A stretch of DNA of 63,425 bases, filler included, from Octopus bimaculoides (lineage: Eukaryota): the NCBI RefSeq assembly GCF_001194135.2. It is 9 parts of 8 records of this genome, joined end to end, with 100 filler letters (N's around TTAATTAATTAA, not from the genome) between each part and the next. Parts side by side here need not be neighbours in the genome. Positions count along the whole stretch, not along the records: positions 25,112 to 42,899 come from NW_026299678.1; 8 more parts are not named here. One strand, 5' to 3'. Shown piece by piece: positions 25,641-27,104 of this stretch (its first letter is position 1; every line of letters starts with the position of its first letter). Both the position numbers and the translations under genes were made by a program. The notes under the pieces were generated by a model. The model made no database searches. It was not told the DNA's origin and saw only the letters and a list, made by a program, of their open reading frames with translations.

Positions 25641-25916
25641 AACAGGGTAGTGGTAATATAATGCCCACCACCCCACAAAACAATTCTCTCTCATTCCCTC
25701 CTCCACCGACACAATCCCACCACAAACCCTGCAACACAATTCCCACACACATCAACTAAAAATTATTAACTGCCCTCCCACCAAAAACTTCTGCTCCACT
25801 TCCTAAAGCTCTAAACGACATCATAAATTCCTTGCATCCCACAATTCCCACCCAACAAATCCACAATGCCCCACAATTCCCAGGCACCACACAAATCTCT
25901 TGCATCTCACAATTCC
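25641..25916 (+). repeat. Left arm of inverted repeat flanking the Sec7 exon
   Basis: Reverse complement of ~26822-27104. By manual count, 13 mismatches and 1 gap over the outer 131 nt. Confidence 0.9.
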
Positions 25917-26190
25917 CACAAATTTCTTGCATCCTACCCACAATTTACACATGTATCTCAAAAATTACTTGCATCCCACAATTTTCCCACGTGTCCCACA
26001 AATCTCATGCATCTCACAATTCCCACATATCTCTTGCAATCCCAGAATTCCCAGACACCACAGATCCATCGCAGCCCACGATTCCCACAAACATTACCAC
26101 AAAACCTGCATACATCCCCACAAATCATCAACTGTCCCCACCATCTCTAAAAACCCTAACCCACATCCTTAATTGTATAAACTCCAATAC
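25815..26190. repeat. Degenerate tandem array of ccacaattccc / aaatctcttgcatc units extending the left arm toward the exon
   Basis: Repeated cccacaattccc and ttgcatc motifs. The same unit appears reverse-complemented as a near-perfect 34-bp duplication at 26790-26868. Confidence 0.8.
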
Positions 26191-26202
26191 CCAACACATC
26201 AT

Positions 26203-26480
26203 CATCGTTTAACGTCCACTTTCCATGTTGGCATGGGTTGGACGATTTGACTGAAGTCTGGAGAGCCAGAGGGCTGCACCAGTTTCCAATCTGATCTGGC
26301 AAACTTTCTACAGCTGGATGCCCTTCCTAACGCCAACCACTCCAACATTTGCCTTCCATGCTCGCATAGGTGGGACGATTTCACAAGAGCCAGCTAGGCT
26401 GAAGCCTGCACCAGACTTGTGACTGTTTTGGCAGGATTTTTACAGCTGGATGCCCTTCCTAACACCAACCACTCAACAGA
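26203..26480 (-). mobile_element. Nested fragments of the abundant (GAT)n-tailed retroelement 3' end (RTE-like tail)
   Basis: catcatcatcgtttaacgtcc..gcatgggttggacg..tacagctggatgcccttcctaac. Other copies at 32110-32540, 32745-33020, 54330-54470, 62590-62685. Confidence 0.7.
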
Positions 26481-26527
26481 GTGAAACAAAACCTCAATTA
26501 AGGGCCAATGAATTAAACAATACTCAC

Positions 26528-26689
26528 TCTAAAACTTCTTGGTTTAACGGATTCTGCAAATTTCCTAGGTACTCTCCAATCATCTGTTTGCTGAGTCCTT
26601 TGCGTGTAAGCAGGAATTTGGCAATATTTGCCGGTAAATGGTCGACAAAACCATGCTCAATGAGGAATCGTAACCCCTTTTCTGGTTTT
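26528..26689 (-). CDS. IQSEC: IQ motif and Sec7 domain Arf-GEF (IQSEC/BRAG/schizo family), internal exon encoding the N-terminal half of Sec7
   Basis: KPEKGLRFLIEHGFVDHLPANIAKFLLTRKGLSKQMIGEYLGNLQNPLNQEVL matches the IQSEC signature KPEKG..YLI..GF..RKGLSRQMIGE(Y/F)LGN. Acceptor ttttcag| at 26690, donor |gtgagt at 26527. 162 nt, phase 2-2. Confidence 0.95.
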
Positions 26690-26789
26690 CTGAAAACGAG
26701 AGAGAGAAAAAAGAGATTTAACAGGAGGGCTACATTGTGCAGGTGGAGTAAAATGTAAGCATTGCAGATATAAAACAGACACACATATA

Positions 26790-27104
26790 TTGTGGGATAC
26801 AGGAGATTTGTGTGGTGCCTAGGAATTGTGGGATACAGGAGATTTGTGTGGTGCCTAGGAATTGTGGGGCATGTACAAAATTTGTTGGGTTGGTTGGTGG
26901 GATGCAAGGGGCTGATAACTATGATGTGGTTTAGAGCTTCAGGAGGTGGGGGCGGGGTTTTTTGGTGGGAGGGCAGTTAATGTTTTTTAGTTGAGATGTG
27001 TGGGAATTGTGCTGCAGCATTTGTGGTGGGATTGTGTAGGTGGAAGAAGGAGTGGGAGAGGAATTGTTTTGTGGGGTGGTGGGCACTATATCACAACCAC
27101 CGTT
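26790..27104 (-). repeat. Right arm of inverted repeat flanking the Sec7 exon
   Basis: Reverse complement of 25641-25916. Inner end is ~100 nt from the exon acceptor. Confidence 0.9.

What the first reader, a model, noticed from the sequence alone, without database searches (positions are those of the whole stretch)
25641..27104. IQSEC Sec7 exon is bracketed by a ~270-bp inverted repeat
Seen: 25641-25916 is the reverse complement of ~26822-27104 (about 89% identical over the outer 131 nt by hand count, lower internally). The only recognisable conserved IQSEC exon sits in the loop, ~100 nt from the inner end of one arm. I saw no other copy of this repeat in the window. Established: reverse-complementary intronic matches promote back-splicing and exon skipping and give ADAR its dsRNA substrate, and coleoid cephalopods edit RNA extensively. 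Inference: the pre-mRNA folds into a long stem that loops out this frame-preserving 162-nt exon. That could switch between an active GEF and a Sec7-broken isoform, or produce a circRNA. Alternative: a foldback element that captured the exon; I found no target-site duplication and the exon is undegraded, which argues against this.
Basis: partly seen in the sequence, partly recalled or inferred. Interest (0 to 1): 0.82.

Follow-up and report, generated by a model that had tools for sequence, protein, structure and literature searches.

The report
Inverted repeat pair flanking IQSEC exon
A genuine Sec7-domain exon of an IQSEC-type gene lies between two diverged, oppositely oriented copies of a ~300-nt non-coding repeat that could pair in the pre-mRNA; this layout is already well known from inverted Alu pairs and here looks like an ordinary by-product of repeat-filled introns.

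Summary
25646-25916 is the reverse complement of 26822-27101, at 82.6% identity over 282 columns (E 4e-76). A canonical 162-nt, frame-preserving Sec7 exon (minus strand, 26528-26689) sits in the ~900-nt loop, 99 nt from one arm. In silico the arms form about 267 bp of imperfect dsRNA.

Each arm has a ~190-nt unique outer part followed by 33-36-nt tandem units. There are about 9 units on the left and 2.2 on the right. I found no coding capacity, no target-site duplication and no other copy in the 17.8-kb piece.

The introns are packed with other interspersed repeats, including a second inverted pair that spans the same exon. Nothing indicates selection for the stem:
- Wobble-compatible transitions are 17 on the transcribed strand against 15 on the other.
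- The splice sites look strong.
- Seven orthologous loci from other animals have no such repeat.
- Published octopus data report few, weakly expressed circRNAs.

The best reading is two copies of a repeat in opposite orientation, tolerated in the introns of a functional gene. They are a probable ADAR substrate with at most minor skipping or back-splicing.

Arm copy number, cephalopod orthologues and RNA evidence could not be tested, because the collections hold no DNA from this genome. This is a known kind of arrangement and of low to moderate interest.

The parts
25641..25916 (.). Left arm, core. It lies in the intron downstream of the exon and is the G-rich 3' arm of the stem in the minus-strand pre-mRNA. 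It consists of a unique outer ~190 nt followed by the first tandem units.
   Evidence: Inverted match to 27101-26822, 82.6% over 282 columns, E 4e-76; alignment A1.
25917..26091 (.). Inward extension of the left arm: further degenerate 27-38-nt tandem units (CACAAATCTCTTGCATCYCACAATTCCCAC-like). They pair only weakly with the right arm's units.
   Evidence: D3 and D5 families; TRF periods 38 and 27; weaker inverted matches at 71-78%; motif scan.
26197..26483 (+). Two tandem SINE-like fragments in the loop, between the left arm and the exon. This family has copies at 32390-32990 and a degenerate copy at about 27085-27200.
   Evidence: D10 and D14; alignment A2; self-BLAST.
26528..26689 (-). IQSEC-type Sec7 exon, 162 nt and frame-preserving. 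It encodes (R)KPEKGLRFLIEHGFVDHLPANIAKFLLTRKGLSKQMIGEYLGNLQNPLNQEVL(E), with a pyrimidine-rich acceptor and a GTGAGT donor.
   Evidence: Pfam Sec7 E 5e-13; 60-78% identical to IQSEC exon ORFs elsewhere; same exon boundaries in 6 of 7 loci; nucleotide similarity confined to 26520-26692.
26789..27106 (.). Right arm. It lies in the intron upstream of the exon and is the C-rich 5' arm of the stem in the pre-mRNA. It starts with a perfect 36-nt x2.2 tandem (26789-26868) and ends with the unique outer part.
25603..25640 (.). N10 assembly gap, a G9 run and a perfect 13-nt x2.5 tandem just outside and running into the left arm. The outer boundary of the left arm is therefore not securely assembled.
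27085..27200 (+). Degenerate SINE-like fragment abutting the outer end of the right arm.
   Evidence: Alignment A2.

Best explanation
Two old, diverged copies of one non-coding repeat unit lie in opposite orientation in the two introns that flank a genuine, constitutive-looking Sec7 exon of an IQSEC-type gene. Each copy has about 190 nt of unique sequence plus a variable number of 33-36-nt tandem subrepeats. These introns are saturated with interspersed repeats.

Shown:
- The repeat, its anatomy and the exon.
- The ability of the minus-strand transcript to form about 267 bp of imperfect dsRNA that loops out the exon.
- The lack of any sequence sign that the stem is under selection.

Inferred:
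- The arms are members of an interspersed repeat family, or an old local inverted duplication of one. They came to bracket the exon by chance and have been tolerated.
- When transcribed, the hairpin is mainly an ADAR substrate, so it would be promiscuously edited and partly melted.
- It causes at most low-level exon skipping or back-splicing as splicing noise, not a regulated GEF on/off switch.
For: - The repeat is real homology, and the stem forms in silico.
- The arms have no ORF with any relative, no Rfam family and no tRNA.
- The surrounding about 13.9 kb of resolved sequence carries at least four other repeat families and more than eight inverted pairs. One of them also spans the exon: 26208-26482 against 32386-32517.
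- Pairwise divergence is 17%. That is about 8.5% per copy, or about 10% after my own Kimura two-parameter correction of the counts. This lies within the range reported for octopus transposable elements (PMC6279123).
- Transitions are wobble-compatible 17 times on the transcribed strand and 15 times on the other.
- The exon keeps 25 of the 27 residues that are invariant in 11 orthologues, and its splice sites are intact. A neutrally decaying copy would look this good with probability about 0.01-0.03 at the arms' divergence.
- The exon boundaries are the ancestral ones.
- Orthologous loci in seven other animals lack a comparable repeat.
- Octopus circRNAs are few and low, and most editing is in intronic and 3'UTR hairpins (PMC9699675).
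- In humans, hundreds of thousands of Alu pairs flank constitutive exons. Their association with skipping is statistical and strongest for weak acceptors (PMC13019027).
Against: - Copy number of the arm in the source genome is unknown. No second copy exists in the piece, so membership of a dispersed family is inferred, not shown.
- No target-site duplication was found for either arm.
- The geometry is favourable for looping. The stem is long, one arm lies 99 nt from the acceptor, there is no competing copy in 16 kb of upstream intron, and the upstream intron exceeds 16 kb. A real effect on splicing cannot be excluded.
- The wobble test has little power, with only 32 transitions.
- No RNA data were available.
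Confidence: 0.6

Rival explanations
1. The inverted repeat is a functional RNA switch. Pairing of the arms loops out the 162-nt exon and produces, in a regulated way, a Sec7-deficient IQSEC isoform and/or a single-exon circRNA. ADAR editing of the stem would tune the outcome.
For: - Stable stem of 267 bp, with helices up to 34 bp.
- Arms lie 99 nt and 436-611 nt from the splice sites.
- The exon is frame-preserving and covers Sec7 model positions 14-67, so skipping would remove part of the catalytic domain's core.
- The upstream intron is long and holds no competing copy.
- The mechanism is established for inverted Alus (PMC2533698, PMC13019027).
Against: - No strand-specific preservation of pairing.
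- Strong-looking splice sites.
- The repeat is absent from seven non-cephalopod orthologous loci.
- Inverted pairs are common in this very piece, so one around an exon is expected by chance in a scan.
- circRNAs are scarce in octopus.
- From memory (Zhang et al. 2014), single-exon circles usually come from longer exons.
- No expression evidence of any kind.
Confidence: 0.12
2. A single foldback-type (long-TIR) mobile element whose loop carries a captured copy of an IQSEC exon. The real gene would lie elsewhere.
For: The arms resemble foldback-element terminal repeats. They are long inverted arms with tandem subrepeats whose copy number differs between the arms, and the left outer end carries a short 13-nt repeat. 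No other IQSEC exon is present in the 17.8-kb piece.
Against: - No target-site duplication at the outer ends. The left end does sit on an assembly join, which weakens this test.
- The exon has the ancestral boundaries, intact splice signals and an intact conserved core. This is unlikely for an unselected copy at the arms' divergence, p about 0.01-0.03.
- Long introns are expected in this kind of genome (PMC6279123), so missing neighbour exons carry little weight.
Confidence: 0.05
3. The arms are not transposon copies but a local inverted duplication, for example by template switching during replication. An intronic, tandem-repeat-bearing segment would have been copied to the other side of the exon, giving only two copies in the genome. 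The consequences for the RNA are the same as in the best explanation.
For: Only two copies are seen, they are close together, and neither has a target-site duplication. No relative was found in any searchable collection, although those collections lack this genome.
Against: Both arms end at the same outer position, as expected for discrete element copies. The neighbourhood is dominated by dispersed repeats. Neither point is decisive.
Confidence: 0.2
4. Assembly artefact: a mis-joined or chimeric contig created the inverted copy.
For: An N10 gap with a G9 run lies 28 nt outside the left arm, and the piece has six further gaps.
Against: Both arms and the exon lie in one uninterrupted contig, 25613-28850. 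The arms differ by 17% with indels and have different tandem-unit numbers. That is unlike palindromic library or assembly artefacts, which are near-identical.
Confidence: 0.03

Closest known systems
Inverted intronic Alu pairs causing loop-out exon skipping in primates (Lev-Maor et al. 2008, PMC2533698; Denisko et al. 2026, PMC13019027; the TBXT tail-loss case cited there)
   Same: Two roughly 300-nt repeat copies in opposite orientation in the introns on either side of an exon. They are predicted to form a long imperfect stem that loops out the exon, and they are also an ADAR substrate.
   Different: The repeat here is not an Alu or a recognisable SINE. Its family and copy number are unknown. 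The acceptor looks strong, whereas the Alu effect is concentrated on weak acceptors. No skipping has been observed here.
Reverse-complementary matches that drive exon circularisation. From memory: mouse Sry; Jeck 2013; Zhang 2014; Liang & Wilusz 2014. Ivanov et al. 2015 is cited in PMC9699675.
   Same: Complementary sequences well above the 30-40 nt needed, lying close to the back-splice sites, with a long upstream intron.
   Different: A 162-nt single exon is short for a single-exon circle (memory). There is no back-splice evidence. In Octopus vulgaris only 296 confident circRNAs were found, at low levels.
Foldback (FB-like) transposable elements of Drosophila and other animals (from memory)
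   Same: Long inverted arms built partly of tandem subrepeats whose number differs between the arms; no coding capacity in the arms.
   Different: No target-site duplication was found. The loop holds a selectively maintained host exon with ancestral splice sites. Multiplicity in the genome was not shown.
Hyper-edited intronic inverted repeats (ADAR substrates) in human and coleoid transcripts
   Same: Long, imperfect intramolecular dsRNA within a pre-mRNA. Octopus editing is reported to be mostly intronic or in 3'UTR hairpins.
   Different: Editing of this locus was not tested, and the taxon of the piece was not verified with the tools.

Membership tests
Exon flanked by reverse-complementary intronic repeats (architecture competent for loop-out skipping or circRNA formation) | Complementary sequences in inverted orientation, one in each flanking intron | tested here: met
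   25646-25916 against 27101-26822, with the exon 26528-26689 between them.
Exon flanked by reverse-complementary intronic repeats (architecture competent for loop-out skipping or circRNA formation) | Pairing long and stable enough (at least 30-40 nt) and predicted to form in the transcript | tested here: met
   267 intermolecular bp, longest helix 34 bp, MFE -437 against -179 +/- 8 kcal/mol for shuffles. The full 1486-nt fold pairs the arms.
Exon flanked by reverse-complementary intronic repeats (architecture competent for loop-out skipping or circRNA formation) | Observed skipped-exon or back-splice junctions that depend on the repeats | not testable with these tools
   No RNA-seq or genome of the source species is reachable. 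Control searches with an abundant SINE of the piece find nothing.
Exon flanked by reverse-complementary intronic repeats (architecture competent for loop-out skipping or circRNA formation) | Conservation or compensatory change of the pairing, if functional | tested here: inconclusive
   No strand bias of wobble-compatible transitions, 17 against 15. Seven non-cephalopod orthologous loci lack an equivalent repeat. No cephalopod orthologue was available.
Foldback / long-TIR transposable element | Long terminal inverted repeats with internal tandem subrepeats | tested here: met
Foldback / long-TIR transposable element | Target-site duplication flanking the element | tested here: not met
   No shared k-mer of 5 nt or more at the outer flanks. 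Caveat: the left flank is 28 nt from an assembly gap.
Foldback / long-TIR transposable element | Multiple dispersed copies in the genome | not testable with these tools
   No other copy in the piece. The public collections searched hold no DNA of this genome.
IQSEC/BRAG Arf-GEF gene (exon identity) | Sec7 domain sequence of the IQSEC subtype | tested here: met
   Pfam Sec7 E 5e-13. Best relatives are exon ORFs, some of which JGI names 'IQ motif/SEC7 domain-containing protein', at 60-78% identity. One related contig carries the IQ_SEC7_PH domain downstream.
IQSEC/BRAG Arf-GEF gene (exon identity) | Ancestral exon-intron boundaries | tested here: met
   The same acceptor position in 6 of 7 other loci and the same donor position in all 7.
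IQSEC/BRAG Arf-GEF gene (exon identity) | IQ motif, the rest of Sec7 and the PH domain in the same gene | tested here: not met
   tblastn finds no other IQSEC exon in 25112-42899. They are presumably outside the piece or in gaps, so this is not evidence against membership.
ADAR dsRNA substrate | Long intramolecular dsRNA in a transcribed region | tested here: met
   In silico only.
ADAR dsRNA substrate | A-to-G mismatches clustered in RNA reads | not testable with these tools
   No RNA data.

The most novel reading that the evidence does not exclude
The inverted repeat is a lineage-specific, selectively retained RNA switch in octopods. Arm pairing, opposed by ADAR editing, would set the ratio between full-length IQSEC and a Sec7-deleted (GEF-dead, possibly dominant-negative) isoform or a circRNA in neurons. 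That would link cephalopod RNA editing to control of synaptic Arf6 signalling.
Probability: 0.06. Interest if true: 0.65.

Novelty: new member of a known kind. Interest (0 to 1): 0.25.

Why it matters
If the stem really regulated inclusion of a catalytic-domain exon of a synaptic Arf-GEF, it would be a non-primate example of repeat-driven loop-out splicing or circularisation. It would also give a concrete route by which heavy ADAR activity could tune a protein's function without recoding it.

On the evidence available it is more useful as a cautionary case. In repeat-rich introns, long inverted pairs around exons are expected by chance, and structure prediction alone cannot separate a switch from a tolerated by-product. 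The locus is a reasonable, cheap candidate for a targeted look in existing octopus RNA-seq, but it is not a discovery in itself.

Tried and rejected
1. **Copy number of the arm.**
   - Translated arm ORFs found nothing in the 5.8-billion-protein collection or the 1.84-billion representative library.
   - Arm 23-mers found nothing in viral, metagenome or prokaryote genome contigs.
   - These negatives are uninformative. Controls with a SINE that occurs three times in the piece at 93-95% identity also found nothing, so the collections hold no DNA of this genome.
2. **Cephalopod orthologues.** The protein collection returned only short exon ORFs from unlabelled metagenome or Logan contigs, at most 78% identical. 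No full-length annotated IQSEC came back, so no octopod or squid locus could be fetched.
3. **Rfam and tRNA scans of the piece.** These gave only sub-threshold low-complexity miRNA-family hits and no tRNA.
4. **Homology inward of the tandem units.** I tested whether the arms extend to the splice site. They do not.
5. **Target-site duplications.** I checked under three models: the pair as one element, and each arm alone. None was found.
6. **Other IQSEC exons in the piece.** None was found. That query was partly written from memory, so it is only a lead.
7. **Literature.** I found no paper linking IQSEC to cephalopod circRNA or editing.
8. **Rejected readings.** Assembly artefact, because the arms differ by 17% and lie in one contig. 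Decayed captured exon, because the exon's conservation is too good.

Full report
**1. Observation**

The piece (25112-42899) contains one strong inverted match: 25646-25916 against 27101-26822. It is 82.6% identical over 282 alignment columns, E 4e-76. The repeat finder reports the same match as gap-free blocks of 43-111 nt at 81-92% complementarity.

In a MAFFT alignment 242 of 292 aligned positions match, with 20 gap columns. The inner part is 80% identical. Homology starts at about 25641 and ends at about 27106. No other copy of the arm occurs in the piece.

**2. Anatomy of the arms**

Each arm has a ~190-nt unique outer part followed, towards the exon, by tandem units of about 33-36 nt.
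- The left arm carries about nine degenerate units reaching 26091 (D3 and D5; TRF periods 27 and 38).
- The right arm has a perfect 36-nt x2.2 tandem at 26789-26868.
- Inward of the tandem units there is no further homology.
- The arms have no ORF with any detectable relative, no Rfam family and no tRNA-like part.
- No target-site duplication is visible, whether the pair is treated as one element or each arm as its own insertion.
- The outer end of the left arm lies 28 nt from an N10 gap followed by G9, and runs into a perfect 13-nt x2.5 tandem. That boundary is therefore not secure.
- Both arms and the exon lie in one uninterrupted contig, 25613-28850. The arms differ by 17% with indels, so an assembly palindrome is unlikely.

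**3. The exon**

On the minus strand a pyrimidine-rich tract (CTCTTTTTTCTCTCTCTCGTTTTCAG) precedes the exon 26689..26528. The exon is 162 nt (one base, 53 codons, two bases) and is followed by GTGAGT.

The peptide matches Pfam Sec7 at E 5e-13, model positions 14-67 of 183. It is 60-78% identical to short exon ORFs in metagenome and Logan contigs, some of which JGI names IQ motif/SEC7 domain-containing protein.

In seven such loci the donor position is identical, and the acceptor position is identical in six. Nucleotide similarity to the window is confined to 26520-26692.

The exon keeps 25 of the 27 residues that are invariant in 11 orthologues, and the two changes are conservative (V to I, F to L). 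Under neutral decay at the per-lineage divergence of the arms, a copy this intact would be expected with probability about 0.01-0.03. That figure assumes the arms diverged in place. The exon is therefore a functional, canonical exon, not a decaying captured fragment. No other IQSEC exon is in the piece, so the upstream intron is longer than 16 kb.

**4. Context**

The introns are full of interspersed repeats:
- A SINE-like family at 26197-26483, about 27085-27200 and 32390-32990.
- A roughly 380-nt SINE, at 27216-27594, 40503-40884 (95%) and 31892-32107 (93%, inverted).
- A further SINE family at 27894-28340 and 31703-31877.
- Tandem arrays at 35897-38350.

More than eight inverted pairs occur in about 13.9 kb of resolved sequence. 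One of them also spans the exon: 26208-26482 against 32386-32517, at 74-85%. A long inverted pair around an exon is therefore not exceptional in this sequence.

**5. RNA structure**

The 1486-nt minus-strand transcript folds with the arms paired almost end to end and the exon in the loop, MFE -697 kcal/mol. The two arms alone form 267 intermolecular base pairs, 15 of them G-U. The longest perfect helix is 34 bp, and the MFE is -437 kcal/mol against -179 +/- 8 for shuffles.

The upstream arm ends 99 nt from the acceptor. The downstream arm core is 611 nt from the donor, or 436 nt counting its extra units. This geometry is compatible with the known looping mechanisms.

**6. Is the stem selected?**

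Of the 32 transition differences between the arms, 17 remain G-U pairs on the transcribed strand and 15 would on the other strand. There is no bias, although the test has low power.

Seven orthologous loci from other, unidentified non-cephalopod animals have no comparable cross-exon repeat. The only match is a 109-nt, 72% one kilobases away in L008. The feature is therefore lineage-specific at best.

**7. What could not be tested**

Arm copy number, cephalopod orthologues and RNA evidence are the decisive tests, and all were out of reach.
- Arm ORFs and arm 23-mers find nothing in any collection. Control queries from a SINE that is abundant in the piece also find nothing, so the negatives carry no information.
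- The protein collection returned no annotated full-length IQSEC, so octopod and squid loci could not be fetched.
- I could not verify with tools that the piece is cephalopod. The SINE-like repeats resemble octopus repeats as I remember them, but that is only a lead.

**8. Comparison with what is known**

The arrangement is the same kind as inverted Alu pairs that shift exons to skipping. Examples are Lev-Maor 2008 (PMC2533698), Denisko 2026 (PMC13019027) and PMC13019944. It is also the same kind as the reverse-complementary matches that promote back-splicing.

In humans, 232,493 Alu pairs flank 23,540 constitutive exons within 5 kb. The association with skipping is statistical and strongest for weak acceptors. 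The acceptor here looks strong.

In Octopus vulgaris only 296 confident circRNAs were found. They were expressed at low levels, which the authors attribute to ADAR antagonism. Most editing there is in intronic and 3'UTR hairpins (PMC9699675).

Octopus genomes are 35-44% repeats with millions of transposable-element copies. The modal divergence from consensus is 7-17% (PMC6279123). This is compatible with two copies that each differ by about 8.5-10% from their common ancestor.

The arms also resemble foldback-element terminal repeats. However, the target-site duplication test is not met, and the loop holds a selected host exon.

**9. Verdict**

The functional part (a regulated GEF-dead isoform or a circRNA) is untested, and on indirect evidence it is unlikely.

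The most likely account (about 0.6) is that two copies of a non-coding repeat, or an old local inverted duplication of one, are tolerated in the introns of a functional IQSEC gene. They would form an ADAR-targeted hairpin with at most minor splicing side-products.

This is a new instance of a known kind of arrangement. Interest is low to moderate (0.25). The regulated-switch reading keeps a probability of about 0.06 to 0.12, depending on how strictly it is stated.

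Noticed in passing
window 28586-28728: Near-perfect 41-bp hairpin (95% complementary, 61-nt loop). RNA MFE is -89.9 kcal/mol, z = -11 against shuffles. It lies in the upstream intron beside a TAT-rich microsatellite and a 648-N gap, and looks like a small palindromic or MITE-like element.
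   Followed up: partly
window 26208-26482 vs 32386-32517: A second inverted repeat pair that also spans the Sec7 exon. These are SINE-like fragments, 74-85% identical and about 6 kb apart. The arms are therefore not the only cross-exon complementarity.
   Followed up: partly
window 27216-27594, 40503-40884, 31892-32107: Three copies of a roughly 380-nt SINE at 93-95% identity, one of them inverted. It is much younger than the arm pair. I used it as a positive control for the database searches, and it was absent from all collections.
   Followed up: yes
window 35897-36285 and 36290-38350: A 174-nt tandem repeat (2.2 copies, 95%), followed by a degenerate array of about 200-290-nt units at 65-81% identity. 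Satellite-like intronic sequence.
   Followed up: no
window 34487-34596 and 34632-34741: A 110-nt direct repeat at 99% identity that ends exactly at a 967-N gap. It may be assembly redundancy at a scaffold join.
   Followed up: no
window 25603-25650: An N10 gap, a G9 run and a perfect 13-nt x2.5 tandem (GGGTAGAGTAACA) at the outer end of the left arm. The poly-G next to a gap looks like a sequencing or assembly artefact, and it makes the arm's boundary uncertain.
   Followed up: partly
window 26789-26868: A perfect 36-nt x2.2 tandem duplication inside the right arm, although the arms are 17% diverged overall. This points to recent slippage or unit turnover within the old repeat.
   Followed up: no
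window 30347-30534, 41510-42681: All Rfam matches in the piece are sub-threshold hits of miRNA families (mir-3149, mir-297, mir-466 and others) on TA/TG low-complexity tracts. They are false positives.
   Followed up: yes
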